NCBI RefSeq assembly: GCF_001194135.2 | Contig: NC_068994.1 | Coordinates: 44,272,960 to 44,327,784, forward strand | Length of the DNA stretch: 54,825 nt | Direction of reading: 5' to 3' | Origin: Octopus bimaculoides | Lineage: Eukaryota | In this document: one piece after another, positions 16,862 to 52,909 of the stretch | How the letters are laid out: each line of letters begins with the position of its first letter | How positions within the stretch are numbered: the first letter of the stretch is position 1 | Made by a program: the position numbers and the translations under genes | The notes under the pieces: model-generated | The model's input: the letters and a program-made list of their open reading frames with translations, nothing else | What the model was told of the DNA's origin: nothing | Databases searched by the model: none

Positions 16862-16862
<1 letters not shown>
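16468..16862 (+). mobile_element. tRNA-derived SINE family A, full length
   Basis: Head GGAGTGGCTGTGTGGT (A box) ... GGTTCATTCCC (B box), central (TG)n, tail gactgaaacaagtaaaagagtaaaag. Confidence 0.9.
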
Positions 16863-18334: not shown

Positions 18335-21300
18335 AATACTTAAGTCAGGTGGATTTTTTACATTAGCACAAGGTAATAAGACTTTTGCTACCACCACAAG
18401 ATCTAGTCCTTGCAACAGTGTTCTGGCTTGTGTGCCTCAATGACTTTGAAAGCTATGGCAGCAGTACACAAGCCCCAAATAGGGCCTCCCATACTGAGCA
18501 GGTTAAAGGATGGAAACCAGAACAATACAGATCACTTCTTCTCAGAGATAAAAATTGGTTTGCATATGGTTAACACATACCCAGAAAAAAAACTTATGTT
18601 GCAGGAGTATAAGTGGCAATCCCAAACAAACAAAACTTAGAACAGTGGAGAATGGAGAAAAGTTATCACTGACCAATGCTCCGCAGAGAGTGAAGGGTTT
18701 ACATGAAATTAAATAAATAACGCTTTTGGAAACATAATATAAGGAAATAATCTATTAAACAATTGAAAAATGTAAGACCACAACTGGTTTTGTAAGACAC
18801 TACTTTCAATATATTTACTGGAAGAATGAAAGGTGAAGTCCACTTTGGTAAGTTTCAAACTTACAATGTAAGGGGACATAACAAAAATACTGAAAGGCAT
18901 AATGATAATTTGATATTAATTACTGTGAAGAACAGTATTTCATTTTACATCCATCATACATTTCCAAGCATATCACAGGTCTACAAGTCAATATTGTGTC
19001 TCACCCTGTGTTAGCAGGGCGATATTCTCACTTTTAAATTTATCTCTCTAGATTGTCTAAAGAATTCATAGTCAGCATTGCAGAACATCATAACTTGCAG
19101 TGAAGGTTCAGAGTTCTATATAAAATTTATGGAGATAAACTTAAAAGTGAGAATAACAATTTCCTACATAGGCAGAATGATAGAAATTTGGCAGGAAAGG
19201 AACAATCAGTCAAATCAAATCCAATATTTGACTGGTTCTTTATTTCATCAACCCACGCAGTATAAAACACTAAGTTGACTTCAGTGGGATTTGAACTCAA
19301 AATGATGTAACTAAATGCTGCAAGGCATTATTCTTCAATTGTTGGATGTTCTATCAATCCTGCTTTTATATTTTAGAATAGTGAAACAATAAGTTATGAA
19401 TTCCTTATGCCATTTTTTAAACCAAGTACATTGCTAATGTAAAACAGATATCCTGATGTTAGGAAGTTGTCTCCCTTGACTCTTGCTCTCCACTTCAAGA
19501 TTTTCTGCTGTTCTGTTAAGCTTCATTCATTGTTTGATGATTATGTCAAATACTACTTCCAAGATTATCATTTATATAGCTATGCTTATCTGTATTTGAC
19601 AAATACATATTGTCAACCAGGGAGGACAAAGAGAAAATACTGGGTTTGAAATAACCGTTAACAAGAAGTGTATCATGCTAAAATTACATCACATAGTTTG
19701 CACACAGGAATACAAGATATAATGGTGCATGTAATTAAATAGCTAAAACTATTTGCTAAAAACAAACACAGGGCTGGTAATTTTTGTTATTCTTTTCAGT
19801 CAATCGATTACCCTAAATTGGCACTTTTTTTTATCAGTCCTAAGATGACAAAAGGCAAAGTTGACTTCAATGGGATTTGTTCAGAACACAGAGATCAGAA
19901 TAGATATCATGAGACATTGTATCTGATACCTTAGCAACACTGCCAGTTCAACACCTAAATGTAAAGTCTTGATAGATAATTGCTTTTCATTCATTCAGTA
20001 ACGTAAATTCTTGATAATTTCCTGTTGTTTAAATTATCTTCTAATTTTATCATTTATCATTTACTTGCTTTAGTCATTAGACTGAAGCCATGCTGGAGCA
20101 CCACCTTGAAAGATGTAGTCAAACAAATCGACCCCAGTACTTAAGCCTGACACATTCAATTAGTCTCTTTTGCCAAACCACTAAGTTATCGGTACATAAA
20201 CACCAATACTAGTTATCATGTGATGGTAGAGAACAAACTCAAAGACACACTTCAATGATCACAAGTTCAACACCCCGAACCACTAGTTCACAGGCCTTCG
20301 CATCATTCACATCACTCACATCACCTCTAATAGGCTCCAACAATATTCCCCTTCAACTTTTACCCGTGATAGTCTCTCACAAATATTCTAAAGAAGAAAG
20401 ATAAAGAATACAGTAAATGCTTCAATTACTAAAATTTCAAATCTAAACAAGCTGGAATGTGTTGTAAGCAAAGAGCAATTACTTGAAATTTAAAAAGAAT
20501 AATAATTAGATAAAATATTCAAAATACTATAGAGAAAAAATTTTTTTTTTAAAAAGAGTTATGTAAAACCAAGCAAGATTAACAACAACACAAAAAGTTC
20601 ACACATTTCGCCAGATACTTAATGGCTGGAATAATCTTTTATGAGGAGAATCTAGTGCTTAGGATAAACAAAGAAGAATTTTAAACTAATAGTAACTTTC
20701 TATTTTAAAAAAATAAATAAACAGGTGGTGATGTGAGGTGCTTTATTGAAATTCCCAAGTTTCACAATTGCTAAGGAATTTATTCGAAATTTCTCTAGAA
20801 AATATATTTACACAAATATGAATGTAATTCTCTTAAGAGAGTGTTATGAATATTTAAAAGGTACTGTCAAGTAATCTTTATAATAATTTTTTTTTCTCTA
20901 AGCATGAGGTCTAAAATTTTGGGGGAGCGGGCTAGTCGATTAGATCTTTATAATAATTTTTTCTACTCAAGGCACAAGGTCTGAAATTTTGGGGGAGGGA
21001 GCCAGTCAATTAGATCGACCTCATTATACAACTTGTACTTAATTTATCAACCCTGAAAGGATGATAGGCAAGCTTTTTAATAGCCTGTTGACTCACCATC
21101 AAGGATAATATCTTTGGATTGTATGTTTTGGATTAACCAATGTGGTGGAAGCAGTACCAGATTTTGGACAAATGTGGCCTTGTGCTAATTAAGTTATGAG
21201 GACCCGTACTTGGGGACCCCTTACTTATAAAGGCCCTTCATTGGCCCTTTTATGTAAAATAATAACATGTAAAAGAGTTCACATTATTAATTTCACTTTT

Positions 21301-23003: not shown

Positions 23004-23078
23004 CGTTTTCTTCCATTATTGGTAACTGGATATTGTTATTCTTTGTATTAGACTTTGGCACTTTGGATTATTTCACTG
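23004..23078 (-). pseudogene. 75-nt fossil exon with strong splice sites
   Basis: tttttttcag acceptor and ACG|GTAAGC donor, but stops in all three frames; lies between SZT2-like exons. Confidence 0.4.
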
Positions 23079-27336: not shown

Positions 27337-27486
27337 CTTTTTAGCTGTTGGTATCTTCACTGTAGTGGTTGATGCTTTCCATTCATTTGGTGGCTCAACG
27401 ACAAAGTAAAAGAGACTGGCTGACTTCCTTAGGTGTGAGTACCTCTTCTCAGCAGGATTTCTTATGAAGGCAAAAGGGTTGTTTGT
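27337..27486 (-). CDS. Repeat exon B4 of an unidentified protein: TNNPFAFIRNPAEKRYSHLRKSASLFYFVVEPPNEWKASTTTVKIPTAKK
   Basis: gcttttatttttag acceptor, AAG|GTAAAG donor, 150 nt, phase 0-0, no stop, homologous to B1-B3. Confidence 0.75.
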
Positions 27487-27798
27487 CTAAAAATAAAAGC
27501 AGATTCTCTTTTTGCATTCAATTCAATTTATAAAATAACAATAACAACAACAACAACAACAACAATAATAATAATAATTTTTTCATTTTATCTAGTTTCA
27601 GCTCATGAGCAGCGGCCATGCTGGGGCACTGCCATTTGGTGTTGCTACATAATTTTAATTTTACTTCACGAATGCTTTTCAGGAATTGACATTTGGTGCA
27701 TGAGAGAGTTTGGTGCGGCTGCCCTCATCTGCACCTCCTGCCACAAAATTGGTTCATCTGGGACACTTGATAATAATAATAATAATAATAGTAGTAAT

Positions 27799-28012
27799 AA
27801 TCCTTTCTACTGGAAGTACAAGGCCTCAAATTTGGGGGAAGGGATTAAGTCGATTACATCGACCCCAGTGCGTAACTGGTACTTATTTAATCAACCCTGA
27901 AAGGATGAAAGGCAAAGTCGATCCCGGCGGAATAAGAACTCAGAACGTAGCAACAGGCAAAATACCGCTAAGCACTTCCTCAGGTGTGCTAACGACTCTG
28001 CCAGCTCTCCAC
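27799..28012 (-). mobile_element. tRNA-derived SINE family B, full length
   Basis: Head GAGAGCTGGCAGAGTCGTTAG...GAGTTCTTATTCC, tail (ATT)n. Confidence 0.85.
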
Positions 28013-28054
28013 AATAATAATAATAATAATAATGATGATGATGATGATGATGAT

Positions 28055-28255
28055 AATTTTTGAGGAACTTGTTGGAGAAATTGGAATTGATATGAGAGTA
28101 GGACATGCTCAGAAACCCACTTTATTGGGTACAATTAGAATCTCTAGATTGGTGCTTGAGTGCTAAGTATAATGTAATGAGATCCTGTGAGACCTTTCAC
28201 AACAGGTTACTGTCCCCTCTTACAGAATTAACCAGAGCAAGTGAAATCAAGAGCT
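28055..28255 (-). pseudogene. SZT2: SZT2-like fossil exon
   Basis: Acceptor tttcactttcag; ELLISLALVNSVRGDSNLL*KVSQDLITLYLALKHQ.../YPIKWVSEHVLLSYQFQFLQQVPQKL; ends in microsatellite/SINE. Confidence 0.5.
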
Positions 28256-29046
28256 CTGAAAGTGAAATGGTGATGATGACAATGACGATAATAATAATAA
28301 TAATAATAATAATGATAAACTGCATCCTGGGGTGAGGTCCCAGCTCATGAATGTGGAGTTAGCTCCAAGTTACCACTTCTCCCAGATCTACTCACTCCTG
28401 TGGTGGTGTTATGGGTCAAATAACAGAAGATGATCCTGTGAGTAAGGCAATGCATGACTCAAAAAAACAATGGCCTCTATACGTGTGTCACACAAGCCCA
28501 TCTGTATGTGGAAATGCCTTGATGCCACATGAACCAGTTCCCCTACTGATGGATTAGATAGACCCTGTGTGCCAAGGGTAAACTTGGGAGAACAAGAGAC
28601 AAACAGTGTAAACTGTAAATAAACCAGCGGAAGTCAACCACACCTGGAATCTTTCTCAACAAAACTCATGAATCTTCAGGTTTTAGATGGAAACCCTTGA
28701 TTGTTGATGTCTGTCAGGATGGCACATGAGAAAAGAAATAATTAAAAACGTCTACTTTATTTTTTCGTAATTAAAAGCTAAATTTGAATTTTTTCATTGC
28801 TGAGTTAGAAACTTTATAAATGATGAACTTTTTGAGTTTTGCAGGAATGCTTCCACCAGCTATTTACAGACAGAACAGGGCATCCACATGATTGCCTAAC
28901 TTGCTAGGAATAGCAGTCAAACCCTCCTCAAACTATATGATTCATGAGGCCAATGAAGAATAACCTGGAGTTAAAATTACAGTTGTGTACAATGTGTGTG
29001 TATGCTTGTATGTATATGTATATATGTGTGTGCATATGTATATGTG

Positions 29047-29112
<66 letters not shown>

Positions 29113-29157
29113 TATATACATATGTGCATGTGTATGTATATGCCTGCAATTTTTTAC

Positions 29158-29265
29158 CTGTTGCATTGGTAGACTTCTTGATGTACTTGAAGCAATCCAT
29201 TTATTTTGTGGTTCAAGTACAAAGTAGAATTGACTTGTTGATTCGGTCAATTGAGAATCATTGGT
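29158..29265 (-). CDS. Repeat exon B3: TNDSQLTESTSQFYFVLEPQNKWIASSTSRSLPMQQ
   Basis: ttcttatttctttccag acceptor, CAG|GTAAAA donor, 108 nt, phase 0-0, no stop. Confidence 0.78.
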
Positions 29266-30143
29266 CTGGAAAGAAATAAGAAGAAAAAACAAATATGATG
29301 AGAAGGTTAAGAAAACACTTCTAAAAGAGAGCAATGTCAAATTCATTTCATTGTACAAATCATCATAAAACATATCTATATACAAAATTATTGTATATAA
29401 ATGCTTTGATTAGAATAGGTCATGATATCCTTATGTTGTAAGAAGTTCCTAAAAGATAGAATATTCTCATCCAACTCCAACCAGTATATAACTGTTATTC
29501 TATTATTCTTTTACATGTTTCATTCATTAGACTGCGGCCATGCTGGGGCACCACCTTGGTAAAAAAAAAAAAGAAATGTTGCCCTGGTAGAGGCTTGAAC
29601 TCACAACCTCCGCATTTCTTTAAACTTGGGAATTAACACAAGGAAGGTACTGTCTATAAGTATGGCGCACAAACCAATTTTGCCACCAGGGTATATAAAA
29701 TGTTGAGGATAAGGATCATCGTTGACAGCATCGCCATCATCATTTAATGCCCATTCTCCATGCTGGCATGGGTTAGATAGCTTGACAGGAACTGGCAAGG
29801 CCAGAGGCCTCACCAGGTTCTGTAGTCTGTTTTGGCTTGATTTCTACAACTGGATCCCTTTCCTAACACCAATGACTTTACAGAGAGTACTGGGTGCTTT
29901 TTATGTAGCACCATCACCAGTGCATTTTACATGGGACCATCACCAGTGCTTTTTATGCGGCACCAGCACCAGTGCAAACTCACTTCTGAAATCATTTGAA
30001 TATTTTATTTATTGATTGGCTTTTTTTTTTTTTAGATCAAATGTATGTTCAGCCTGTATGTGTTTGCTTAACTTGCTAGAAAATACAACCAAATCTCCCT
30101 CGAATTAAATCCTATCATAATAAAAATATATATATATTTTGGA

Positions 30144-30506
30144 TCTTCTTCTTCTTCTTCTTCTTCTTCTTCTTCTTCTTCTTCTTCTTCTTCTTCTTCT
30201 TCTTCTTCTTCTTCTTCTTCTTCATTCTTCTTCTTCTTCTTCATTCTTCTTCATTCTTCTTCATTCTTCTTCTTCTTCTTCATTCTTCTTCTTCTTCTTC
30301 ATTCTTCTTCATTCTTCTTCTTCTTCTTCTTCATTCTTCATTCTTCTTCTTCTTCATTCTTCTTCTTCTTCTTCTTCATTCTTCTTCTTCTTCTTCTTCA
30401 TTCTTCTTCTTCATTCTTCTTCTTCTTCTTCTTCTTCTTCTTCTTCTTCTTCTTCTCCTTTTTCTTCTTCATTCTTCTTCTTCTCCTTTTTCTTCTTCTT
30501 CTTCTT

Positions 30507-30537
<31 letters not shown>

Positions 30538-30555
30538 TTCATTCTTCTTCTTCTT
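30144..30555. repeat. ~410-bp (TTC)n/(GAA)n tract
   Basis: Direct reading; interrupted by TTCA units. Confidence 0.95.
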
Positions 30556-30690
30556 AGTCTCCCAAGTCCAAGAAAGCTGATTCCATAATTTCTTGCTGAA
30601 CAAGATGCACGGATGATTTGTTTGCACCAATCAAATGCTTGAGCTGTACATGAGCTCACTCTCCCTCTTCCTCCATCAAATCAACACTGT
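30553..30690 (-). pseudogene. SZT2: SZT2-like fossil exon
   Basis: DSVDLMEEEGE*AHVQLKHLIGANKSSVHLVQQEIMESAFLDLGD*EEEE; runs into a long (GAA)n tract. Confidence 0.5.
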
Positions 30691-32566
30691 CTGTACAGGT
30701 GCATGCTATTTCCTATTCTTTTTCTGTCTTACAAGTTAACTTGATAAACTCTCTAGAGCTGGTGACATGAAAAAGAGCATCCAATAAATACTGTAAAGTG
30801 GTTGAAGTTAAGAAGGGCATCCAGCTGTAGAAATCAGGAACTCAGGAAATCCCTGAGGTTTGCTGGATCCTGTCAAACCTTCCAAATCAGGCCAGTATTG
30901 AAAATGGATGTTAAATGACAATCATCATCATGATTGTGATTATCTTCTAACAGACTAAATCTCTGTTGATTTTGGCTGGTAATTAATTTTTGATTTCTGT
31001 AGAAATACTTCCTCGAGCTCCTAACAGAAATAACAGGGTATCTACATAGTCACTTAGCCCATTGGAAATAGCTGTCAAACGCCCCTCAAATTATATCATG
31101 CATGTAATTTTAGATATAAAATGTGGAATAGTCACAGCTAGAATTCCTTTGATAATACATGTACAATGGTGATTTTGACAATAAGTATTCAATCTACTGA
31201 ACTACCTGCTCATAGAATTGGTATGTAAGTAGCTGAGTTCTCTTCAAACATATGTACCTTTAATGTAATTATCAGCACAACAAAGCATATGACAAGACAG
31301 GGCAGTTTTTGAATTACATGTACAATCTTTCTGATGGGCTTCAGCACAATCTCTGTCAACCCAGTTTCACTCATAAGGCTTGAGTGAAGTCGAAGCTAAG
31401 GCAAAAGACACTTGCTAAATATGCATCACATTGGGACTGGATCTGGATTTTCATGATTGTGAAATGAACTTTCTATCTGTTCGACTTCGCTGCAGCATCG
31501 ATAGATTATAAAATAAGAATGAACTCACTGTATACAGTGCTCAGGTACACTACAACTCATCAGAAAAAGGGACCAAATCTACATGATCAGCATATAGAAT
31601 ATGCACAAGAAGTGCAGAGTGAATATTCTTTTATTCTTTTATTCTTTTACTTGTTTCAGTCATTTTGACTACAGCTATGCTGGAGCACCGCCTTTAGTCA
31701 AACAAATCGACCCCAAGACTTATTCTTTGTAAGCCTAGTACTTATTGTATCTGTCTCTTTTGCTGAACCACTAAGTTACATAAACATAAACACACCAATC
31801 GGTTGTCAAGCGATGGTGGGGGGACAAACACAGACACAGAAATACATACATATATATATATATATANNNNNNNNNNNNNNNNNNNNNNNNNNNNNNNNNN
31901 NNNNNNNNNNNNNNNNNNNNNNNNNNNNNNNNNNNNNNNNNNNNNNNNNNNNNNNNNNNNNNNNNNNNNNNNNNNNNNNNNNNNNNNNNNNNNNNNNNNN
32001 NNNNNNNNNNNNNNNNNNNNNNNNNNNNNNNNNNNNNNNNNNNNNNNNNNNNNNNNNNNNNNCAAAGGTTAATTTCTTCTGCTCCTAGAGTCTCTCTCGT
32101 GGGAGGCTATCCAAAGCTGATTTCCTAGATCTGACAATTCATTTGATACTATATTACCATAAAATAAACTAAATCCCTAATTCTCTGACTTGTACTTTTA
32201 TATATGCAAATTTTTGCAGTTATTACTTAACATAAGAAGAATGATACACAGATAACAATCCCATAATTTTCACAAATGGACTGGATTTTCCGGCATACAA
32301 ATCAGCATAGTATGAATTCTAAACAAAGCATGAATTTATAAACATTGTCACTATCTTTCCAAATCCTGCTGCATTTCACATAGAATTTTTGGTCCTCCAA
32401 AGTCGTCTTGGTGTACAAGTCTGTCTACCTTTTTTGGGGCTGTGAATTTTGGTCTGAAAAATTTAACATGTGTGCCAGAAAATATGGTAAACTAAAGTTC
32501 TAAACAATTGTTTTTAAAGTCACTAATGGGTTACCTTTTGCCAACTCTGTTGTCTGAAACAGATTA

Positions 32567-32903
32567 CTGTAGTTGATGGCATATAAGACACTTTTTTTCA
32601 AAAAAATAATTCCTAGAATTATCCCAGGTCTTATATGCAAATTTGGGTCTCCTGTGAGCTACTTTTGTTTCGGATGCTTGCTTTTTCTTAAATATGCTCT
32701 GCTCAAAGTAGGGAGCATGTAATATCCTTTCTACATTAAACCCAAGCCTGAAGTTTGGAGAAAGTGGGGGTGAGTAATCAATCACGACCTCAGTACAAGA
32801 CTGGTACTTACTTTACTGACCCCCAAAAGGTTGAAAGGCAAAGTCGACCATAATGGAATTTCAACTTAGAATGGCTCAGCATCTTTTATGCCATCAAATG
32901 CCG
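32567..32903. mobile_element. Tc2/pogo-like MITE with a nested SINE B fragment; second TIR-like fragment at ~32390-32489
   Basis: TA|CTGTAGTTGATGGCATATAAGAC left end pairs with TCTTTTATGCCATCAAATGCCG right end; SINE B at ~32760-32870. Confidence 0.6.
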
Positions 32904-32904
32904 T

Positions 32905-33100
32905 TATAAGACACTATTATCTAATCTGGCCTCAACTGGTTTTAAACTTGGTACTGCTGGCTAATTAAACTGTTTCTCAATTAGTATAGTCATCTCTAAA
33001 TCTAATACCAAATTTCATCAAGGTAAACTAAAACTGTTTAATACTTTAACTAAAGGTGCAGCACATAGATGTAATAAGTTACACCTACAAATAGACAGGA
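32905..33100 (-). pseudogene. SZT2: SZT2-like fossil exon
   Basis: LSICRCNLLHLCAAPLVKVLNSFSLP**NLVLDLEMTILIEKQFN*PAVPSLKPVEARLD; abuts a MITE end. Confidence 0.55.
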
Positions 33101-33174
33101 CTACATATTAAATAATACTGTAAGTTATGCTTATAATAGTCATCACTATCATTGACCACTTTCCCACTTTTTAA

Positions 33175-35185
33175 TGATCAATTTTCCATGCTTGCATGGG
33201 TTGGACAGAGTTTGCTGAGGCAGATTTTATACAACTTGATGTCTTTCCTGTCACTAACTCTCACTTAGTTCAAAACAAGGTAATATTTCCCCATAGCCAG
33301 ACATGTTTCTGCAGGAAATTGGAAATAAATTACTCTGCTTGTATGACAGCAACACGATATTGGTTTTACTTGACTCAACAGGTCTTCTCAAGCGTATCAT
33401 ATCGCACGACACATCAGGGGTACTCTTAACTGGGCCGGACATGCGTGGCAGCAATCTCACTTTAATTGCGATGTCTTCTCAATCACAACATATCTCCAAA
33501 GATCTCGGCCTCCTGTCATTGCCTCTGTGAGGCCCAATGTTCGAAGGTCATGCTTCACCTCCTCATCCCATGTCTTCCTGGGTCTTCCTCTTCCACAAGT
33601 TCCTTCCACTGTTAGGGAGTGGCACTTCCTCACACAGCTGTCCTCATCCATACATAACACATGACCATACCAGCGCAGTCATCTCTCTTGCACACCACAT
33701 TTGATGCTTCTTATGCTCAACTTTTCTCTCAGGGCACTTACACTCTGTTGTGTATGCACACTGACATTACACATCCAGCGGATCATACTAGCTTCATTTC
33801 TTTCAAGCCTATGCATGTCCTCAGCATTTGTGGCTCATGTTTCACTGCCGTGTAGCATGGCAGTTCACACACATGCATCATACAGTCTACCTTTCATCCT
33901 GAGTGAGAGGCCCTTAGTTGCCAGCAGAGGTAGGAGCTCCCTGAACTTTGCCCAGGCTATTCTTATTGTAGCTGCTACATTCTCAGAGCAACCACCCCCA
34001 CTACAGACTTGGTCACCTAGGTAGCGAAAGCTATTAACTACTTCTAGTTTCTCCCCTGGCATATGATGGAATCTATTTTCTGTACATCTTCAGTGTTTAT
34101 TGCCCCTCTGCATCTGCCACACAGAAAAACTATTTTCCCGGTTAACCTCCCTTTGATATTGCTGCACCTTTTATGTGTCCATAGCTTACACCAGGTACAT
34201 CATATGGAGTTTCTACCCATGCCTTTTCTACAGATTGAGCAAGACCATCTACCTGAAGGGAATTCAGGTTTGGCAGCATTTCTACTTACTAAGACTTTGG
34301 TTTTTGCTAGGTTGACCCTAAGGTCCTTCAATTCTAGACCTTGCCTCCACACCCTAAACTTCATCTCTAGTTCTGGCAGTGACTTGGCTATTAGGGCAAG
34401 GTCATCAGCATAGAGGAGCTCCCAGGGGCAGCCTGTCTTGAATTCCTCTATTATTGCCTGGAGGACTATCATGAAAAGAGGGGACTGAGGACTGATCCTT
34501 CATGAACACCTACTTCTACTCAGAATTTTTGACTCACCTTATTGACAGCATCCCTATATAGGGCTTGTACAGCTTTTATCAACCACTCATCTATCCCCAG
34601 TTTCTGCATTGACCACCAGATAAGAGATCATGGGATCCTGTCAAAGGCTTTCTCCAAGTCAACAAAAGCCAAGTACAGAAGTTTATCTTTGGCTAGGTAT
34701 TTCTCCTGTAGTTGCCTTACCAGAAATATGGCATCAATGGTGCTTCTGCCAGGCACAAAACCAAACTGCATTTCAACTAGGCTAACTCTCTCCCCAATTA
34801 GTTGGGCTATGATCTTCTCTGTAACTTTCATCACCTGATCCAATAATTTGATACTCCTATAGTTATTTCTATCTCAAACATCACCTTTACCTTTGTAGCA
34901 GTAGACTATGGTGCTGCTACACCAGTCATTGGGTATGACTCCTTCATGAACTACCTGATTTACGATGCAGGCAACAAGACCATAACCTACACCAGCCAAT
35001 ATTTTAATCATCTCAGTGGTGATTCCTGATTGGCCAGGTGCTTTCCCTGTCTTCATATCCTTGATTGCTTTATCTACCAGAGTACTGTCGATTCAGGTAG
35101 CTGGTCCCTCAATTGGGTCAACTTTTGGCAGACTCTCCTCCTCCCATTCATTCTCTACATTCAGCAGTCTTTCATAATGGCATAT
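33175..35185 (-). mobile_element. 5'-truncated, frameshifted RTE-clade LINE
   Basis: KTGKAPGQSG, MQFGFVPGRSTIDAIF, FVDLEKAFDR, LLYADD, FRYLGD, GRGRPRKTW motifs in order; Cys/His-rich insert CSIC...C..CKLWTHKRC after YADD. Confidence 0.95.
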
Positions 35186-35480
35186 TACAATAAAATAAAA
35201 GCAACTAAATTTCTATCTTCCACCATTTTTGATGATTATTCTTCAGAACATAAAACCAGAAGAAATGTTGCCATGCATTTTATCTGATGTGGTAACAATT
35301 CTGCCATCTCTGCCTTAAAGATTAGCTTAATATCAATGCTAGTGATAACATACATGGATTTATTCTTGATAGGATATATGGCTTTACCTATGACCATTTT
35401 ACAGATCCTCCAAGACTAGTGGAAAGAAGGATTGAAGTTATCCTCAGATCAGAAACTTGATCTAAATGTTTGGCTTTTAC

Positions 35481-35895
35481 CTGTACTCATACTTGCATTG
35501 GTAGCCAGGGGTGGATTGAACTGGCTTCAACCAACAACTTCACCACATCCTTTGCAAATGCCGACCACATCCAACAGTTGGCCACAGTTGAGGCTGTCCA
35601 GCAAGCAAAGTAATGCATCTGCCTGAAACTCAAAAATCCAGCTTGCAAATTTGACAAACACCCTACTGGGAAAGCAAGTTCACTGGACAGTACAGATGCT
35701 GTAGCCATTGCCATCATTTGCTGTTGAGGTGCAGAGTTCAGGTTCAAAGTTTCAGTGGAAATACAAATTCACATGTGGTCGTCGGTCACTTGTATACACA
35801 TTTTGGAATAGCGTGACCTGTAGCAGCTCATCTTGGCACCAATTCTCAACCACCACAGAGCAAACATAACCTTGGCTTGCAATGGAATTGATTCT
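35481..35895 (-). pseudogene. SZT2: SZT2-like fossil exon
   Basis: About 135-codon frame with 3 TGA: QGYVCSVVVENWCQDELLQVTLFQ...DALLCLLDSLNCGQLLDVVGICKGCGEVVG*SQF; donor ACAG|GTAAAA. 5' end approximate. Confidence 0.6.
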
Positions 35896-36239
35896 GTTAA
35901 ATTCATCCAAGGGTCAGTTGATGTGTTAAACTGGATGAGAGATTAAGAGCACCAATCCAAGAATGGGGACCATCATCCTTCTACTCTGATAGATTTCTAC
36001 ACAGATTCCGTCAAACAAATTTCTCTCACAAGGCTTTGTTTGACCTGAGGCTGTAGTATAGAAGATACTTGCCCAAGGTACCACACACTGGGATTGATCC
36101 CAAAACTACATTATGAACACCTACATCTATTGCCACAGCCATGACTGCAATTAGTAAACCAATCCATAGAGTAAACCTCTATAATTATCACTATTACAGC
36201 TACTATTGTAAGATTACAATTACAGGTACTACTCTATAA

Positions 36240-36860
36240 TGAGTGTTTATCACTGATACCACATTTATTACTACTGCTGCTGCTGCTGCTGCTACTACTA
36301 CTACTACTACTACAACTACTACAACTACTACAACTACTACTACTACAACTACTACTATTACTACTACTACTACCACTGTTGCTGTTGTTGTTGTTGTTGC
36401 TGTTGTCGTCGCCGTTATTGTAGGTGGTGGTGGTGGTGGTGGTGCTGCTGCTGGTGCTGCTGCTGCTGTTGTAGTTACTGAAGCTATTGTTACAACGATG
36501 ATTGCTGTTATTAATTTTTACTTTGTTAGATTTGATTTTTGATGTTGTTGTTGTTGTTGTTGCATTGCAGATTATTTTTGTTATACTGCAACTGGTGGTA
36601 TCACCAATGCTGCTGTGTTTAGGGTTACTACTACTACTACTACTTCTGCAGTATGCTAGCAATACTACTACTACAAGCCACTACCACTACTGCTACAACC
36701 CACCACCACCACCATCACTACTACTATTACTTCTGCTATTACGACTACTACTACTACTACTACTGCTACTGCAGTATGCTAGCAATACTACAATTACAAG
36801 CGATTACCACTACTACTACAATCCACCACTATCACTATTACTACTCCTATTACTATTGTA
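36240..36860. repeat. Compound trinucleotide array (ACT/GCT/GTT/GGT) with an internal ~120-bp duplication
   Basis: ctgcagtatgctagcaatactac occurs near 36646 and near 36769. Confidence 0.9.
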
Positions 36861-36989
36861 TGTGTGAGGTTTTCTTTGAGGAAGTCTGGTAGTTGCCCAC
36901 GTACACAAGTTTCCTCTATCTATACCACTAATGTTTATTCAAGGGAAGGGTCGATTCAACTTTAGCACCAGTGTTGTTGCAGGTGTTGC

Positions 36990-37346
36990 TGTCAGGTGGC
37001 AAAGAGCTGGAACAAGGCATCTTACAACAAGACATCTTGCTCAACTCCCAAAAAGGTCAGCCAATCCAATGCTCTGGATTGGTACATTTTACCAACTGCA
37101 AAAGCTTGTCTGGTATGGTCAAATATCCTGCCACAACTCCCTGTCTGAAACCATTCTCCAAGGCACAGTTGGGAGTGGGTGAAAGAGAGGCAGATGAAGA
37201 AAATCCTGGTTTGACAGCATCAAGAACTGGACAGGTTACAGCACAATGACCTTGCTACACATGACAGGGAACAGAGACCAGTGACAATGGTTGACTCTAT
37301 GAAAGCATCTACAGTGGCATCCCAATGCTTGGTTACATCAGTTAAG
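36990..37346 (+). mobile_element. RTE LINE 3' fragment
   Basis: KLVWYGQISCHNSLSETILQGTVGSG*KRGR*RKSWFDSIKNWTG followed by a (GAT)n tail. Confidence 0.85.
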
Positions 37347-38009
37347 GGGTCTTAATGATGATGATGAAAGAATTAAAGGCAAAGTTGACCTAGGCAGGAT
37401 TTGAACACTGAGAATAGGAATTTAGAACAGACACCATGAGGCCCCTAACAACTTAGCCAATTCTCCTCCTTAAAAATAGTTTATGTTATTTATATATAAA
37501 GTATCCATAAAATCTTGTTCAATGATTGTTATTTTTATTAATCTGCTCTTGAAGTTAAATACTTCAGAAGGTGAATGTTGTAATTGTTGTTGTTTTTGTT
37601 TAGCCCTAGGTCAATCTCAAACAAGCAGACCAATGGTTACTTAAATGGGTCTCCATCAGGGACAACAACAAGGGCTCCAGTTAATCTGATCAACAGAACA
37701 GCCTGCTCATGAAATTAACATGCAAGTGGTTGAGCACTACACAGACATGTGTACCCTTAACATAGTTCTCAGGGAGATTCAGCATGACAGAGAATGCCAC
37801 AAGCTTGGCCCTTTCAAATACAGGTACTACTCATTTTTGCCAGCTGAGTGAACTGGAGCAACATACCACCAGGGATCAAACTTACAACAACATTATGATC
37901 ATGAGCTGAACACACTAATCTCTAATCCATCCATACACCTTCATTCTTTGTTTACTTAAATGACATGGAAACCAGGTAACAGGTCTTGTAAGTCCAAGGG
38001 CTTACTCTT

Positions 38010-38219
38010 TTACTCTTTTACTTGTTTCAGTCATTTGACTGTGGCCAGGCTGGAGCACCACCTTTAGTCGAGCAAATCGACCCCAGGACTTATTCTTTGG
38101 AAGCCTAGTACTTATTCTAGCGGTCTCTTTTGCCGAACCGCTAAGTTACGGAGACGTAAACACACCAGCATCGGTTGTCAAGCGATGTTGGGGGGACAAA
38201 CACAGACACACAAACATAT

Positions 38220-38262
<43 letters not shown>

Positions 38263-38441
38263 CATATATATACATATATATGACAGGTTTCTTTCAGTTT
38301 CCATCTATCAAATCCACACACAAGGCTTGGGTCAGCCCGAGGCTATAGTAGAAGACACTTGCCCAAGGTACCATGCAGTGGGACTGAACCCGGAACCATG
38401 TGGTCGGTAAGCAAGCTACTTACCACACAGCCACTCCTACG
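38010..38441 (-). mobile_element. SINE family A, full length
   Basis: Reverse complement of the 16468-16862 consensus. Confidence 0.9.
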
Positions 38442-38480
38442 ACTTAAGAAAAACATAATTAAAAAAATGAGCCATATTAC

Positions 38481-38599
38481 TTTAAGATGATATAGCTATC
38501 TTTTTACAGTATAATTTTTGCTTATCTGCATCTTTCCACCTGTACCATATTTCTATCTTAACCTTCTTCATACTAACTCATCTGAATCCACCCATGACT
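38481..38599 (-). pseudogene. SZT2: Fossil exon of the same pseudogene
   Basis: Acceptor tttatatcatag, donor AAA|GTAATA; ESWVDSDELV*RRLR*KYGTGGKMQISKNYTVKR*LYHLK. Confidence 0.48.
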
Positions 38600-38729
38600 C
38601 TATGATATAAAGTTACCATTTTAAAGTAATGTAAATTAAAACATTCCCTCAAAATTTCTGTTTAATTTATGTACTGAACACCAACTTAATGGCGAAGTTA
38701 TTTGACTGAATTCTACATTATTTTCACAA

Positions 38730-38889
38730 TTAATTGAAACATGCACAAGCAGTGCATTCCAACAGCAGTAAGATATCTGTTATGCATTCCTACAATACAC
38801 CAAACCCCTGTCTTACAAGCTTCGCTTTAACATCCCCAATATCACTCACATACACCATCAAATTTGTATCACATGAAATGTTTTTTCTC
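38730..38889 (-). pseudogene. SZT2: Fossil exon of the same pseudogene
   Basis: RKNISCDTNLMVYVSDIGDVKAKLVRQGFGVL*ECITDILLLLECTACACFN; 3' end approximate. Confidence 0.45.
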
Positions 38890-39327
38890 CTTATAATAAT
38901 AACAAAAAATAAGCCTAATCTTTAAGCCATGGCTCCACTACATGCTAGATGAATAAAATGCGATCATTATCCCTTGCAATATCTATAACCATTATGGACT
39001 TAACATCTCTGATTTATATTCTACTGGAAGATAAATTTCTGTTCATAATAAAGCTTTCACTAAATTATAAATTTATCTAAACATATTAATGGGCTACTCT
39101 AAAGAGAGCAAAAAATATATACATTTTGCCAGTTACGTATTTCTCCTAAATCTAATCCATAATTTTGTTGTTATTATTTTTTTTTAATATATTCCAGAGT
39201 TTAATCTTTCATTAAGTTCTAGGATAATGTTGATATTAATATGGCTGTCTGTTAAGATGATTTGCCATGATAGCCAATTATGGCATCAATGTATTGTGCA
39301 AATGTTGCTTAATTCCACCCAACTTAC

Positions 39328-39435
39328 TTCTGGGAGCTTTATTGCTGTAGTTGAGGCTTTCCATTCATTTTGTGGTTCAAGGACAAAGTAAAACTGATTT
39401 GATGATGACTCTGTTATGGCAGCTGGAGTGTTAGT
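39328..39435 (-). CDS. Repeat exon B2: TNTPAAITESSSNQFYFVLEPQNEWKASTTAIKLPE
   Basis: catgtatttttcag acceptor, GAA|GTAAGT donor, 108 nt, phase 0-0, no stop. Confidence 0.8.
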
Positions 39436-40199
39436 CTGAAAAATACATGGAAGTTACATGAAATTGCAATGGAATACTGCAAAGTCTTTGGGTTTGGTTT
39501 GGCTAGTGATATAATTAACAGATTAAAGCTGAACGACACAGCTTGAAACCATTCATTTTCATGTAGCATCTCAGTTGTTGAAGTGACTAGTGGAAAATTA
39601 TCCTTTAAGTGAAATAGCCTTAAGTGTTTTGGAGGGGAGTAGAAATTGCTTCAGATACCAAATATCAGATTAAATTAAAGACTTTAGAATAAAGCAATTT
39701 AGAAAGCAAATTTTTTATTTTTTTATTTTTAAATAATAATTAGTAGTATTCTATGCCAAATAACTTAGTCAAAATTTTTACCAAGATTAGTAGGGTACAA
39801 ACAGATACAGGACCGAATTTAGACTAATAAATCTAATTTCAAAAATTAATTCTAGCTAGCAACAAAAATAGGAATTATATTGGGCAATTAATATAATTAT
39901 TATTTATTTTTTTTAATCTTTATATTAGAGACTTGACAAAGATGCTGATATTTACAGCAATCATAAATCAGAAAGGGAAAAATAAATTTTGTCTCTGATA
40001 AAATTTCACGATTTTACATTTACATCATGTATACCATTTATGCTAAGGTAGAAAAAAAAAAGAAGTAAATAGATAAAATACTCTGTAAATAATAAAACTA
40101 ACTGGTATTGGTTGATTATCTTAAATTTACAGACTGAAATATTCTGGACGAATAGAAGAAGCATTCTGCAGAAGTCAGAATTTTTCTTCAAACTGAAAT

Positions 40200-40400
40200 A
40201 TTAGTTGTTGATGACTGATGCAACAAAAGGCAGTGCCTTATAGTGGTTGTTTGTTTTCCATTTAATTGTTACAACCATTATCAGCAGCTGGTATGTATTC
40301 CAGACCAAACTGCTGCTACGCTTCAAGGATTACTCTGCTGTTACTTCCACTCTGCACTGTTTCCCATTCAAGCTGCAGCAGCTGCTGCTGCTGTTGTTGC

Positions 40401-40435
<35 letters not shown>

Positions 40436-40470
40436 CTGTTGATTCTGATATAACCAAGGCAGCTACTACT
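40200..40470 (-). pseudogene. Fossil polyglutamine-containing exon
   Basis: LYQNQQQ*QQQQ...QLLQLEWETVQSGSNSRVILEA*QQFGLEYIPAADNGCNN*MENKQPL*GTAF; mixed CAG/CAA run with TAG/TAA interruptions. Boundaries approximate. Confidence 0.5.
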
Positions 40471-40996
40471 GTCACAGAAATGAAGGGATAGCTACTACAC
40501 AACAGAGAGAAAATAGCAATTTTACTAGCTTGTTCGATATCTTTTATTTCATGGTATCATTTGTTCAATTATCAACATCAACCAAATTCAATGATTTATC
40601 TATCAAGTTAATTTTTGAAATAAATTCTTGGTTTTTGCCAACCAAATATAAATATATATATAAATACATAAATGTGTATATATATATATATATATACATG
40701 TATATATATATATATACATATATATATAAATATATTTTTTATCAATCACCAAATGAGATGCATGACAAGCAAAGACAGTGACAAGATTATAGATAATCCA
40801 TAGAAACATCTAAATGTTTTCTGGAAACTACATCATTTTCATTCTGTCAAAATAACTGCAAAGAAAGTTTGCTAATTCAGCTGTCGAAAAATAAATGAAC
40901 GTTTTTGTAGACAAACATAATGATCTGAAATGAATTTCTCTGGAATATTTCAGAACAGCTTCATCTGAATTCTACACTGAATATCCCTGCAAATCA

Positions 40997-41041
<45 letters not shown>

Positions 41042-41148
41042 GCTTCCATAGATTTTATAATAGAATTATTGAATAAATATACTTTTAACCCACATCTGAT
41101 AGCGCTTATTTGTTTGGGATAGAATTTTAGAGAGAAAGCAGGACTTGC

Positions 41149-41280
41149 CGGTTTAGGTGGCGGTGGTTTGAATGTGGTAGTTGAAGCTTTCCACTCATTT
41201 TGTGGTTCAAGGACAAAGTAAAACTGACTTGACGCGTCAGCCATAAGAGGGTTTCCGAATATGTCTGCAGAGCTGTAATT
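41149..41280 (-). CDS. Repeat exon B1: NYSSADIFGNPLMADASSQFYFVLEPQNEWKASTTTFKPPPPKP
   Basis: atttcttttctattccttag acceptor, open frame, phase 0. Donor is probably non-canonical CCG|GCAAGT; an alternative weak GT donor lies at 41082. Confidence 0.75.
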
Positions 41281-41486: not shown

Positions 41487-41767
41487 AACTGTTTTGATCC
41501 ATACATGTAACTCCCAATGAATATGTTGAGTGCCCTTCTTTCCTTTTTCTACTCACTCATATATATATATATANNNNNNNNNNNNNNNNNNNNNNNNNNN
41601 NNNNNNNNNNNNNNNNNNNNNNNNNNNNNNNNNNNNNNNNNNNNNNNNNNNNNNNNNNNNNNNNNNNNNNNNNNNNNNNNNNNNNNNNNNNNNNNNNNNN
41701 NNNNNNNNNNNNNNNNNNNNNNNNNNNNNNNNNNNNNNNNNNNNNNNNNNNNNNNNNNNNNNNNNNN

Positions 41768-46455: not shown

Positions 46456-46992
46456 NNNNNNNNNNNNNNNNNNNNNNNNNNNNNNNNNNNNNNNNNNNNN
46501 NNNNNNNNNNNNNNNNNNNNNNNNNNNNNNNNNNNNNNNNNNNNNNNNNNNNNNNNNNNNNNNNNNNNNNNNNNNNNNNNNNNNNNNNNNNNNNNNNNNN
46601 NNNNNNNNNNNNNNNNNNNNNNNNNNNNNNNNNNNNNNNNNNNNNNNNNNNNNNNNNNNNNNNNNNNNNNNNNNNNNNNNNNNNNNNNNNNNNNNNNNNN
46701 NNNNNNNNNNNNNNNNNNNNNNNNNNNNNNNNNNNNNNNNNNNNNNNNNNNNNNNNNNNNNNNNNNNNNNNNNNNNNNNNNNNNNNNNNNNNNNNNNNNN
46801 NNNNNNNNNNNNNNNNNNNNNNNNNNNNNNNNNNNNNNNNNNNNNNNNNNNNNNNNNNNNNNNNNNNNNNNNNNNNNNNNNNNNNNNNNNNNNNNNNNNN
46901 NNNNNNNNNNNNNNNNNNNNNNNNNNNNNNNNNNNNNNNNNNNNNNNNNNNNNNNNNNNNNNNNNNNATATATACATACATATATATATATG

Positions 46993-50519: not shown

Positions 50520-50958
50520 TGCAGTACAGTTCTAGTACTAACACTGCCTATATGTTTGTTTGCATGAATGTATGTATGTATGTATGTATGTATGTATGTA
50601 TGTATGTATATATGCATGTATGTATGTATATATGCATGTATGTATGTATGTGTGTATATGGATGCATGTATATGTGTACGCATGAATTTGTTTATGTGCA
50701 TATGTATGTGTTTNNNNNNNNNNNNNNNNNNNNNNNNNNNNNNNNNNNNNNNNNNNNNNNNNNNNNNNNNNNNNNNNNNNNNNNNNNNNNNNNNNNNNNN
50801 NNNNNNNNNNNNNNNNNNNNNNNNNNNNNNNNNNNNNNNNNNNNNNNNNNNNNNNNNNNNNNNNNNNNNNNNNNNNNNNNNNNNNNNNNNNNNNNNNNNN
50901 NNNNNNNNNNNNNNNNNNNNNNNNNNNNNNNNNTATATATATACACAAACATACAGAC

Positions 50959-51126: not shown

Positions 51127-52909
51127 AATAATATATAAATATATGCATATATACATACATACATGTAGCTACCTACATATATATGTATATATATATACAT
51201 GCATATATGGGTACAGGACATCAAAAAAATGTAAACAAAATGAGAAACGGTAATATAAAAAAAACAAAAACATAGAAAACGAACATTTTTTTGAACAACA
51301 AAAGAAGCAAACAGAGAAACAAGAAAAGCAACATAAAGAACAATCTCTTCATCAGTTGTCCCTGCCACGCATCCATTTCCAAGTAAGTTTTATCTATGTA
51401 TATACATACATATATATATATATATATGCACACACATATATGTGTGTGTATATATGTGTCTGTATGTCTATATATATATATATATATGCATACATCTATG
51501 TATTATAAATATGTGTGGGCGTGCTTGTGTCTTCAAGATTATTTCTCAGGCAAATTTTACACCAAAAGGACTAAGTAACTTATTCATTCGGGGTTAAGTT
51601 TCTTTAGCTATCAAACCATGAAGAGACTTACTATAAGGCTCTTATATGTATACATTATATATTTTTAGATGTGCCGGAAAGCAAGGAATTTAATACCTTG
51701 ATCTGGTAAAGAACAGATTTTGTGATTATAGTGCTTGGTTAATTCTCAGATAGCCTTTCCAAATGGTCACCAAATTAGACGTCACTTCATGTTAATTATT
51801 TGCAGAGATTTTATTCTTAAGTAGGTGTATTTTTGTTTTTAACCTTCTCATGTCATATCGACTCATAAGGGCTGGCCTTCCGGTTTCATGGCATATATAT
51901 TCTCCACCTGGATGGGACGCCAGTCCATCACAGGATTGTTCATTTTTTTTCCAGCTGAGTGGAATGGAGCAATGTGAAATGAAGTGTTTCCCTCAAGAAC
52001 ACCATGTGTCACCCAGTCCAGGGATTGAAACCAGAATTGTACGATCATGAGTCCAATACTCTAACCACTAAGCCAAGTGCTTCCATGGTTTTTAGATGTA
52101 TTAGAGAAAGGGTTGCAGAGGGGAAATAATGTAAGGATGTGACATTCAGAAATATTTTTCTCAAGAGTAAATTACTTTCAGATTGTTGCTGTTGCTGTCA
52201 TCATATTTCTCATTGCCATTGTCATTGTCATTGCTACTGTCATCGTCATCGTCCCCATCATTGTCATTGTCATCATTGTTGATGTCGTCATCATTTAACA
52301 GTCATTCTCCAAACTGACATGGGTTGGTTAGATGATTCAACTGGAGCTCGCAGGCCAGGGGACTGCATCAGGCTCCAATGTCTCCTTTGGCATGTTTCCT
52401 ATAGCTAAGTGCTTTTCATAATGCCAATAACCTTACAGGGTGAACTGGGTACCTTTTACATGGCACCAGCATCTCTGAGATCACCAAATAAACTAGCAAG
52501 ACAAGACAGTCCCCTACCCTCAACTGAGAGTAGGAGTAGTATTGAGGCAGATGGCTCTATACCAGGTGATGAGAGGTTAAAGCATAATAGAGGGACAGAA
52601 ACAGGTGTCTTACCACAGGTGAGGTACATGGGTGGCCCAACTGGAAAAGAAAGAGGATGGTGATGAAGATGTGTCAGAACATATCCCTAAGTTACAAGAA
52701 AGTGAATATAAGAGGCGTGGTATGGATAGATAAGCAAGTTCATGAGCGTGTAAGAGGTAAGTGGCAGATAAATAAAGATGGGTCTTAGATAGACAGACAG
52801 AATTTCACTTTTGTTATTATAGATTAGTATTAGAAAGTATTGGCAGGCAGGTAATTACAGGAACTCTTACATTGTAACTGTTAACACATTCTAGTATATA
52901 CTAGAAACA

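What the first reader, a model, noticed from the sequence alone, without database searches (positions are those of the whole stretch)
27337..41280. Unrecognised repeat protein built from four intact homologous symmetric exons (FYFVLEPQNEWKAS motif)
Seen in sequence: four exons of 132, 108, 108 and 150 nt, all phase 0-0 with pyrimidine-rich acceptors and good donors, spread over 14 kb. They share SQFYFVLEPQNEWKASTT with variable S/T/P-rich linkers. About 166 codons carry no stop, whereas neighbouring fossil exons are riddled with them. Several nucleotide differences are synonymous (GAA/GAG, GCT/GCC/GCA). Inference: a live gene under purifying selection, with a modular one-exon-one-repeat design suited to cassette or mutually exclusive splicing. 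I do not recognise the motif; it may be a cephalopod-specific family.
Basis: partly seen in the sequence, partly recalled or inferred. Interest (0 to 1): 0.85.

Follow-up and report, generated by a model that had tools for sequence, protein, structure and literature searches.

The report
Octopus protocadherin tail repeat exons
The four repeat exons are real and strongly conserved, but they are the already-annotated last coding exons of an Octopus bimaculoides protocadherin gene, encoding half of an eight-fold FYFVLEPQNEW repeat in its intracellular tail.

Summary
Four homologous phase 0-0 exons lie on the minus strand: B1 41280-41149, B2 39435-39328, B3 29265-29158, B4 27486-27337. They are not an unrecognised repeat protein. 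Joined, and preceded by a 27-nt micro-exon at 52640-52614, they match exactly the C-terminus of RefSeq XP_052828994.1, 'protocadherin beta-15 isoform X1' of Octopus bimaculoides. That protein has six cadherin repeats, one transmembrane helix and a 451-aa tail holding eight FYFVLEPQNEW modules.

The Argonauta hians orthologue has the same exon sizes and phases. Across B1-B4 it shows 49 synonymous and 3 non-synonymous differences (dN/dS 0.011). Annotated isoforms in three Octopus species skip exactly B2, so cassette use is annotated.

The core Y-F-V-L-E-P is not cephalopod-specific. It recurs with a median spacing of 36 residues in the post-membrane tails of unnamed non-cadherin single-pass receptors, one of them from the bivalve Solemya velum.

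The function is untested. My best guess is a multivalent tyrosine-based docking array whose module number is set by splicing. The assembly gap lies inside the B2-B3 intron and probably hides no exon. The gene is known; the motif is undescribed in the sources I could search. Interest is modest.

The parts
52614..52640 (-). 27-nt cassette micro-exon encoding LGHPCTSPV, the exon just upstream of B1 in isoform X1 and skipped in isoform X3
   Evidence: It is flanked by ctttcttttccag| and |gtaagac. The peptide is followed directly by B1 in P0050 and is absent from P0090.
41149..41280 (-). Exon B1, 132 nt, phase 0-0, tail repeat 5 (NYSSADIFGNPLMADASSQFYFVLEPQNEWKASTTTFKPPPPKP), with a GC-AG intron downstream
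   Evidence: It matches P0050 residues 996-1039 exactly. The Argonauta orthologous exon is also 132 nt and has a GT donor.
39328..39435 (-). Exon B2, 108 nt, phase 0-0, tail repeat 6; a cassette exon skipped in annotated isoforms
   Evidence: with an exact match to P0050. It is missing from Obim X4, Osin X5 and the O. vulgaris 1117-aa forms. The Argonauta exon is 108 nt with 16 synonymous and 0 non-synonymous differences.
31867..32062 (.). Assembly gap inside the B2-B3 intron
   Evidence: It is flanked by a (TA)n microsatellite and a dispersed repeat copy. No exon is annotated between B2 and B3 in either species' model.
29158..29265 (-). Exon B3, 108 nt, phase 0-0, tail repeat 7
   Evidence: It is also part of the older UniProt model A0A0L8H4C2.
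27337..27486 (-). Exon B4, 150 nt, phase 0-0, tail repeat 8 (FYFVVEPPNEW) preceded by an RYSHL motif
23073..23078 (-). Candidate terminal coding piece (CAG TGA, giving Q then stop) after the acceptor cttatttttttcag|; inferred only
   Evidence: P0050 ends ...TAKKQ. This is the best polypyrimidine/AG site followed by a Gln codon and a stop downstream of B4. No homology confirms it, and Argonauta ends with ATA TAA.

Best explanation
Shown: the window is the 3' part of a roughly 110-kb Octopus bimaculoides protocadherin gene (RefSeq 'protocadherin beta-15', XP_052828994.1 and its isoforms). The gene encodes a signal peptide, six cadherin repeats, one transmembrane helix and a 451-residue tail.

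Shown: the tail holds eight modules with the invariant positions F-Y-F-V-x-E-P-x-N-x-W-x-x-S-x-T. In the Argonauta orthologue, module 1 sits at the end of the large first exon and each later module has its own phase 0-0 exon; the octopus upstream exons lie outside the window and were not read. B1-B4 are modules 5 to 8. Because every tail exon is symmetric, exons can be dropped without breaking the frame. Annotated isoforms drop B2 or the 27-nt micro-exon.

Inferred, at about 40%: each module is a short linear docking site centred on the near-invariant tyrosine (YFVL, a YxxL-type site). The tail would then be a multivalent platform that recruits an SH2-type or similar partner after tyrosine phosphorylation, and splicing would set how many sites it has.

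Inferred: the modules arose by tandem exon duplication before the octopus and Argonauta lineages split. The core motif is shared, by homology or by a common binding partner, with the tails of non-cadherin single-pass receptors, at least one of them molluscan.
For: Identity:
- The concatenated micro-exon and B1-B4 match the last 175 residues of P0050 before its final Q exactly.
- P0050 has Cadherin_2 plus five Cadherin hits, E = 5e-78, and a transmembrane helix at residues 685-711 followed by RYNNMR.
- The gene range is 110.6 kb in GCA_001194135.2.

Selection:
- Argonauta hians (L008) has the same exon sizes, 132/108/108/150, all phase 0-0.
- There are 49 synonymous and 3 non-synonymous differences, dS 0.68, dN 0.008, Fisher p = 2e-33. 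Flanking intron identity is 23-57% ungapped, mostly near the random level.
- Protein identity between the two species is 98.2% in B1-B4 against 88.9% in the ectodomain.

Splicing: B2 is skipped in isoform models of three Octopus species.

Motif:
- A profile of the relatives hits the P0050 tail at E = 1.2e-14 among 1.84 billion proteins.
- Median motif spacing in relatives is 36 residues, the same as the 36-codon B2 and B3.
- In relatives the motif follows a transmembrane helix and a basic stop-transfer stretch.
- Tyrosine fills the position before [FILM][VI]LE in 163 of 167 instances when it is not required by the pattern.
- YSH[LIVT], present in 36 of 43 relatives, occurs once, in B4.
Against: - No transcript reads were examined. 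The isoforms are computational annotation models.
- No evidence of tyrosine phosphorylation or of any binding partner exists.
- The tail has no canonical ITAM, ITIM (1 of 8 modules), NPxY, WIRS or PP1 site.
- Selection is equally strong on the linkers and on the invariant Phe and Trp residues. That is more than a minimal YxxL site would need and fits a larger epitope or a small fold.
- Homology with the relatives rests on an 8-10 residue core, so convergence is possible.
- The conserved C-terminal block of the relatives (TYSSIDP...QTLPxNEYN) is absent from the window.
Confidence: 0.8

Rival explanations
1. The YFVL sites are unphosphorylated YxxPhi sorting signals read by the AP-2 mu2 subunit. 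The repeat number would then tune endocytosis or surface level of the protocadherin.
For: All eight modules fit Y-x-x-[LV]. B4 also carries an NPF (an EH-domain motif), and a [DE]xxxL[LI] site lies near the membrane. Surface level is a plausible control point for an adhesion receptor (general knowledge).
Against: A YxxPhi signal needs only four residues, and one copy usually suffices. That does not explain eight copies with invariant F(-1), E-P, N and W, or dN/dS of 0.01 across whole exons.
Confidence: 0.2
2. Each module is a small beta-hairpin (FYFVL strand, EPQN turn, EWKAS strand). The eight hairpins would fold or self-associate, for example to bundle tails in cis, and the tyrosine would be structural rather than a phospho-site.
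For: AlphaFold places a strand-turn-strand on every motif. Four aromatic residues per module are invariant, and the linkers are also conserved. There is a weak likeness to the hairpin repeat of YegP, QFRFVLKAGNG.
Against: The model has pLDDT 31 throughout, so it carries no weight. The YegP match is E = 1.4. The linkers are rich in Ser, Thr and Pro with no other hydrophobic core. In relatives the F(-1) and W positions are not conserved.
Confidence: 0.2
3. One reading: an independent, previously unrecognised and possibly cephalopod-specific gene encoding a pure repeat protein.
For: The 2015 gene model A0A0L8H4C2 treats B3 and B4 as part of a separate uncharacterised protein. Word-index searches returned no other named protein.
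Against: RefSeq models of O. bimaculoides and O. sinensis, and deposited models of O. vulgaris and Argonauta hians, all join these exons to a six-repeat protocadherin. The other exons of the 2015 model include a poly-Asp run read from a microsatellite. The core motif also occurs outside cephalopods.
Confidence: 0.02
4. The copies are fragments of a transposable element or decayed pseudo-exons that happen to stay open.
For: The window is dense in dispersed repeats, microsatellites and a LINE reverse-transcriptase fragment.
Against: There are only four copies in 54.8 kb, all in one orientation, with no flank similarity. The Argonauta locus has exactly eight copies and all are exons. Orthologue dN/dS is 0.011.
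Confidence: 0.01

Closest known systems
Vertebrate clustered protocadherins (alpha and gamma) with their small constant-region exons
   Same: Both have a large exon encoding six cadherin repeats, the membrane span and the start of the tail, followed by small downstream exons for the rest of the tail. Vertebrate tails engage tyrosine kinases (Fyn, FAK/Pyk2, Ret; PMC7339444, PMC6339937).
   Different: All 19 clustered sequences here share one N-terminus, so nothing shows many variable exons sharing these tail exons. This tail is an eight-fold repeat with one exon per repeat and has no sequence likeness to the vertebrate constant domain.
Vertebrate delta-protocadherins (CM1-CM3, WIRS and RRVTF/PP1 motifs)
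   Same: Both are non-classical cadherins with long tails, probably disordered, that carry short conserved motifs and splice variants.
   Different: No WIRS, [RK][VI]xF, RRVTF or NPxY is present in the octopus tail. Published surveys found no vertebrate-type motifs in octopus protocadherins. The octopus-specific motifs they list are EC1, EC5, EC6, TM and PP1, and none is YFVLEP (PMC6339937 text and supplement).
Unnamed single-pass receptors with H-[ND]-Y-F-[VI]-L-E-P repeat tails (P0002-P0084; one is Solemya velum KAL5015160.1)
   Same: They share the Y-F-[VI]-L-E-P-[QE]-[ND] core, a period of about 36 residues, a position after the membrane span, and YSH[LIV] motifs.
   Different: Their ectodomains are EGF-like, weakly LamG-like or unknown modules on a mucin-like stalk, not cadherin. 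Their whole tail sits in one exon. They carry H-N before the Tyr instead of Q-F, lack the invariant Trp, and add a C-terminal TYSSIDP...QTLPxNEYN block not found in the window.
Tyrosine-motif scaffolds such as LAT/PAG transmembrane adaptors and the Draper/MEGF10 tails
   Same: These also carry many YxxL-type sites spread along a disordered tail after a single membrane span. This is a functional analogy drawn from general knowledge.
   Different: There is no sequence relationship, no canonical ITAM spacing, and phosphorylation is untested here.

Membership tests
Protocadherin (cadherin superfamily) | An N-terminal protocadherin-type EC1 plus further extracellular cadherin repeats, six in all | tested here: met
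   P0050 has Cadherin_2 at residues 22-103 and five Cadherin stretches, E = 4.9e-78.
Protocadherin (cadherin superfamily) | A single transmembrane helix followed by a tail without the classical catenin-binding domain | tested here: met
   The helix is at residues 685-711 and is followed by RYNNMR. No Cadherin_C hit appears among the Pfam results.
Protocadherin (cadherin superfamily) | The window's exons are part of the same coding sequence as the cadherin repeats | tested here: met
   The string match to the C-terminus of XP_052828994.1 is exact, and the same join is seen in the Argonauta model mapped onto its genome. Read-level RNA evidence could not be examined.
Delta-protocadherin / WIRS-bearing protocadherins | CM motifs (RRVTF), a PP1 site [RK][VI]xF, or the WIRS motif | tested here: not met
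   Pattern scans of the 451-aa tail gave zero matches.
Clustered protocadherin with shared constant exons | Several alternative variable first exons spliced to the same tail exons | tested here: inconclusive
   All isoforms and orthologues retrieved share one N-terminus. The upstream 55 kb of the octopus gene was not readable.
YFVLEP-repeat receptor tails (unnamed, P0002-P0084) | At least two copies of Y-F-[VI]-L-E-P at about 33-39 residue spacing, C-terminal to a membrane span | tested here: met
   There are eight copies. The profile E-value is 1.2e-14, the 36-residue period matches, and the topology matches.
YFVLEP-repeat receptor tails (unnamed, P0002-P0084) | The C-terminal block TYSSIDP..QTLPxNEYN, DPNYG and multiple YSH[ILV] | tested here: not met
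   A family HMM finds only the four repeat exons in the window. A single YSHL occurs in B4.
ITAM / ITIM immunoreceptor motifs | YxxL/I-x6-8-YxxL/I, or [SILV]xYxx[ILV] | tested here: not met
   No ITAM is present, and the ITIM pattern fits only B4 (LFYFVV) out of eight modules.
Pfam DUF6579 (PF20219) | A score at or above the gathering threshold of 27.2 bits | tested here: not met
   Scores were 22.4 bits for B1-B4, 19.8 bits for the whole protein and 12.9 bits for B2 alone. Only 27 of the model's 210 positions were matched.
Transposable-element fragment | High copy number, both orientations, decayed frames | tested here: not met
   The window has four copies and the Argonauta locus eight. All are in one orientation and all are intact exons. 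Genome-wide counts could not be made.

The most novel reading that the evidence does not exclude
The FYFVLEPQNEW / HNYFVLEPQN module is an undescribed intracellular signalling motif shared across molluscs. On this reading its near-invariant tyrosine docks a conserved partner. In octopods it became attached to a protocadherin ectodomain and was amplified to eight copies by exon duplication, and neurons adjust the number of docking sites by skipping individual repeat exons. That would give the first concrete handle on what cephalopod protocadherins signal to inside the cell.
Probability: 0.35. Interest if true: 0.55.

Novelty: already known. Interest (0 to 1): 0.3.

Why it matters
Octopus protocadherins are a textbook case of independent expansion of a neuronal recognition family. 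Published surveys found none of the vertebrate intracellular motifs in them (PMC6339937), so their downstream signalling is unknown. This gene's tail is more conserved than its adhesive ectodomain (98% against 89% between Octopus and Argonauta). It is built from eight copies of one motif, and annotation suggests that splicing varies the copy number. That makes it a tractable starting point for finding a binding partner. For the scan itself, the lesson is that the finding is a correct reading of real exons, but the gene is already in RefSeq and the apparent orphan status was an artefact.

Tried and rejected
- **Word-index protein searches** returned only the old fragmentary model A0A0L8H4C2 and unnamed relatives. 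They never returned the RefSeq protocadherin, although it contains the query exactly. The apparent orphan status was therefore a tool blind spot. For the same reason, the absence of squid or nautilus hits is uninformative.
- **Other parts of the gene in the window.** A hydropathy scan of minus-strand open stretches, tblastn with relatives' ectodomain and transmembrane exons and a family HMM found nothing beyond B1-B4. The cadherin exon lies outside the window.
- **Pfam DUF6579** scores below threshold on a 27-residue stretch and was rejected.
- **Rfam** gave no RNA family in the window.
- **Solved structures.** Only a non-significant likeness to YegP was found, E = 1.4.
- **AlphaFold** on the 166-aa peptide gave pLDDT 31. 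That is compatible with disorder but is not evidence for any fold.
- **Literature.** No paper contains YFVLEP-type strings, DUF6579 or the sample accessions. Albertin et al. 2015 is not held in the library.
- **Taxon of the relatives.** Only one carries a name, Solemya velum.
- **Two-exon-unit duplication.** The near-equal B1-B2 and B3-B4 spacings (1830 and 1818 nt) suggested it, but the introns share no similarity, B1 is closest to B2, and Argonauta intron sizes differ.
- **Terminal exon.** Its position could only be guessed.


Full report
**What is in the sequence**

The motif FYFV[LV]EP occurs four times in the window, always on the minus strand and in one frame per copy. Each copy sits in an open stretch bounded by a polypyrimidine/AG acceptor and a donor.
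- B1 is 41280-41149 (132 nt).
- B2 is 39435-39328 (108 nt).
- B3 is 29265-29158 (108 nt).
- B4 is 27486-27337 (150 nt).

All four exons are phase 0-0. B2, B3 and B4 have GT donors that rank in the top 3% of GT sites on that strand.

The four copies match one another at tblastn E = 1e-8 to 5e-11. A family HMM and tblastn find no further copy, intact or decayed, in the 54.8 kb. Nucleotide similarity is limited to a core of about 75 nt and does not reach the introns. Differences between copies are mainly synonymous: dN/dS is 0.14-0.41 over 25 codons, and in the 17-codon core dN is 0-0.2 against dS 0.4-1.6. The observation therefore stands.

**The assembly gap**

The gap at 31867-32062 lies within the 10-kb B2-B3 intron. 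It is flanked by a (TA)n tract and a dispersed-repeat copy. No exon's reading frame crosses it. Whether it hides an exon is addressed under the orthologue test.

**What it is**

The first protein search made the peptide look nearly orphan. It returned only the 2015 UniProt model A0A0L8H4C2 of Octopus bimaculoides, which holds B3 and B4, plus a few unnamed proteins carrying repeated NYFVLEPQN.

A profile of those unnamed proteins found 43 relatives. Genomic and transcript contexts place the motif after a Ser/Thr-rich stalk, a transmembrane helix and a basic stop-transfer stretch. That is the intracellular tail of single-pass membrane proteins.

An exhaustive HMMER search of 1.84 billion representatives with the same profile found only 59 proteins. 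One of them was a 1162-residue protein matched in its last 150 residues at E = 1.2e-14. A cluster look-up names it XP_052828994.1, 'protocadherin beta-15 isoform X1 [Octopus bimaculoides]'. The cluster also holds orthologues from O. sinensis, O. vulgaris and Argonauta hians.

Its C-terminus is, residue for residue, LGHPCTSPV + B1 + B2 + B3 + B4 + Q. The LGHPCTSPV piece is a 27-nt micro-exon in the window at 52640-52614, with good splice sites.

The protein has Cadherin_2 plus five Cadherin domains and a transmembrane helix at 685-711. Its 451-residue tail holds eight FYFVLEPQNEW modules, and B1-B4 are modules 5 to 8. The gene spans 110.6 kb in GCA_001194135.2. The window is therefore its 3' part, and the cadherin exon and modules 1-4 lie upstream of it.

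**Orthologue test**

The Argonauta hians locus (L008, no gaps) could be read. Mapping its protein gives these exons:
- a 2370-nt first exon holding six cadherin repeats, the membrane span and module 1;
- exons of 147, 156 and 156 nt for modules 2-4;
- exons of 81, 39 and 81 nt;
- exons of 132, 108, 108 and 150 nt, corresponding to B1-B4;
- a terminal ATA TAA.

Every tail exon is phase 0-0. The B1 donor is GT in Argonauta.

Over the 498 nt of B1-B4 the two species differ at 52 positions, 49 synonymous and 3 non-synonymous. That gives dS 0.68, dN 0.008 and dN/dS 0.011 (Fisher p = 2e-33). The 60 nt of intron on either side align at 23-57% ungapped, mostly near the random level.

Protein identity is 98.2% in B1-B4, 96.8% in modules 1-4 and 88.9% in the ectodomain. 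The Argonauta locus holds exactly eight motif copies, all annotated exons, with none between B2 and B3.

**Splicing**

Annotated isoforms differ by whole tail exons.
- B2 is absent from O. bimaculoides X4, O. sinensis X5 and two O. vulgaris forms.
- The micro-exon is absent from O. bimaculoides X3 and from O. vulgaris forms.
- Three C-terminal endings occur: KKQ, KKI and KK.

These are annotation models and I saw no reads. No pattern of mutually exclusive use appears.

**The motif beyond octopods**

In the relatives the consensus is [EQ]-[NS]-H-[ND]-Y-F-[VI]-L-E-P-[QE]-[ND]. Median spacing is 36 residues (quartiles 33 and 39), the same as the 36-codon B2 and B3. When tyrosine is not required by the pattern, it still fills that position in 163 of 167 instances.

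Thirty-six of 43 relatives also carry YSH[LIVT], and B4 has one RYSHL.

The relatives' ectodomains are not cadherins. One has calcium-binding EGF domains, one locus has a weak LamG-like exon, and others have no Pfam match. Their tails are encoded in a single exon. Only one relative is named, a hypothetical protein of the bivalve Solemya velum.

The core motif is thus not cephalopod-specific. The Q-F-Y-F-V-L-E-P-Q-N-E-W form was seen only in the octopod protocadherin.

**How it most likely works**

Shown: the tail lies after the membrane span, is repetitive, is extremely constrained, and is varied by exon skipping in annotated models.

Inferred: each module is a docking site centred on the tyrosine (YFVL, a YxxL-type site), and the tail is a multivalent platform. 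I put this at about 40%.

Two points count against a minimal phospho-site. Phe(-1), Glu-Pro, Asn and Trp(+9) are invariant in all eight modules, and the linkers are conserved as well. Canonical ITAM, ITIM, NPxY, WIRS, PP1 and RRVTF patterns are absent, apart from one ITIM-like match in B4.

Two rivals remain at about 20% each: YxxPhi sorting signals, and a small hairpin fold that self-associates. AlphaFold gives strand-turn-strand at each motif but with pLDDT 31, which decides nothing.

Paralogue dS (0.4-1.6) is comparable to or above the Octopus-Argonauta dS (0.68). All eight modules are present in both lineages, so the duplications predate their split.

**Comparison with what is known**

Published surveys of octopus protocadherins report no vertebrate-type intracellular motifs. 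The octopus-specific motifs they list are in EC1, EC5, EC6, the membrane span and a PP1 site, and none is this one (PMC6339937 and its supplement). Vertebrate protocadherin tails use CM1-3, WIRS and FAK/Pyk2/Ret interactions (PMC7339444). No paper in the library contains the motif string, and Pfam has no family for it.

**Verdict**

However, the gene is an annotated protocadherin, not an unrecognised repeat protein. What remains undescribed, in the sources I could search, is the tail module itself and its link to the tails of non-cadherin receptors such as that of Solemya.

Noticed in passing
window 52614-52640 (minus): A 27-nt phase 0-0 micro-exon (LGHPCTSPV) of the same gene lies outside the finding's coordinates. 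It is present in isoform X1 and skipped in X3. No orthologue was found at the matching place in Argonauta, which instead has an 81-nt exon there.
   Followed up: yes
window 38006-38094, 31622-31724, 16752-16862, 13244-13321, 698-1029 and others; L008 41903-41983: The tail exon encoding SLNCGHAGAPPSRVLVDHIDPSAYFSQ lies upstream of the window. At both protein and DNA level it resembles a dispersed repeat present in ten or more copies on both strands of the window. It therefore looks like a repeat-derived exon, conserved between Octopus and Argonauta. Argonauta's extra 81-nt exon (…DFAFHPYGVDK) also matches repeat copies.
   Followed up: partly
window 41143-41148 versus L008 50297-50302: The donor of exon B1 is GCAAGT in O. 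bimaculoides but GTAAGT in Argonauta. This is a GT-to-GC donor change in an otherwise consensus site that the RefSeq model still uses.
   Followed up: partly
window 29672-29737, 20325-20387, 17292-17381, about 15463-15495 (minus): The 2015 model A0A0L8H4C2 joins B3 and B4 to an intronic ATG exon and to downstream pieces, including a poly-Asp run read from a microsatellite. The RefSeq model uses none of these, so they look like ab initio artefacts.
   Followed up: partly
window 34200-34472 (minus): A reverse-transcriptase fragment (YADD motif; RVT_1 at 20.6 bits, below threshold) lies in the B2-B3 intron.
   Followed up: partly
window, nine N runs (2777-2876, 4008-4278, 9777-9786, 11203-11234, 11867-12106, 31867-32062, 41574-41767, 46456-46967, 50714-50933): The two gaps whose flanks were read abut microsatellites: (TA)n at 31867-32062, and TA-rich and (GA)n runs at 41574-41767. 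Others adjoin TA-rich simple repeats as seen in ORF translations. This suggests assembly breaks in simple repeats rather than missing unique sequence.
   Followed up: no
L003/L004 (Logan SRR12737815, SRR12737812), protein P0043: One relative is a complete 260-aa ORF with only 13 residues before its membrane span, a juxtamembrane Cys-Cys, and four YF[VI]LE[PK] sites. This layout recalls palmitoylated transmembrane adaptor proteins such as LAT.
   Followed up: partly
tool behaviour: The word-index protein search never returned the RefSeq protocadherin cluster, although the queries are exact substrings of it. The exhaustive representative search did return it. Negative results from the word-index tool for NCBI eukaryotic proteins should not be trusted.
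   Followed up: yes
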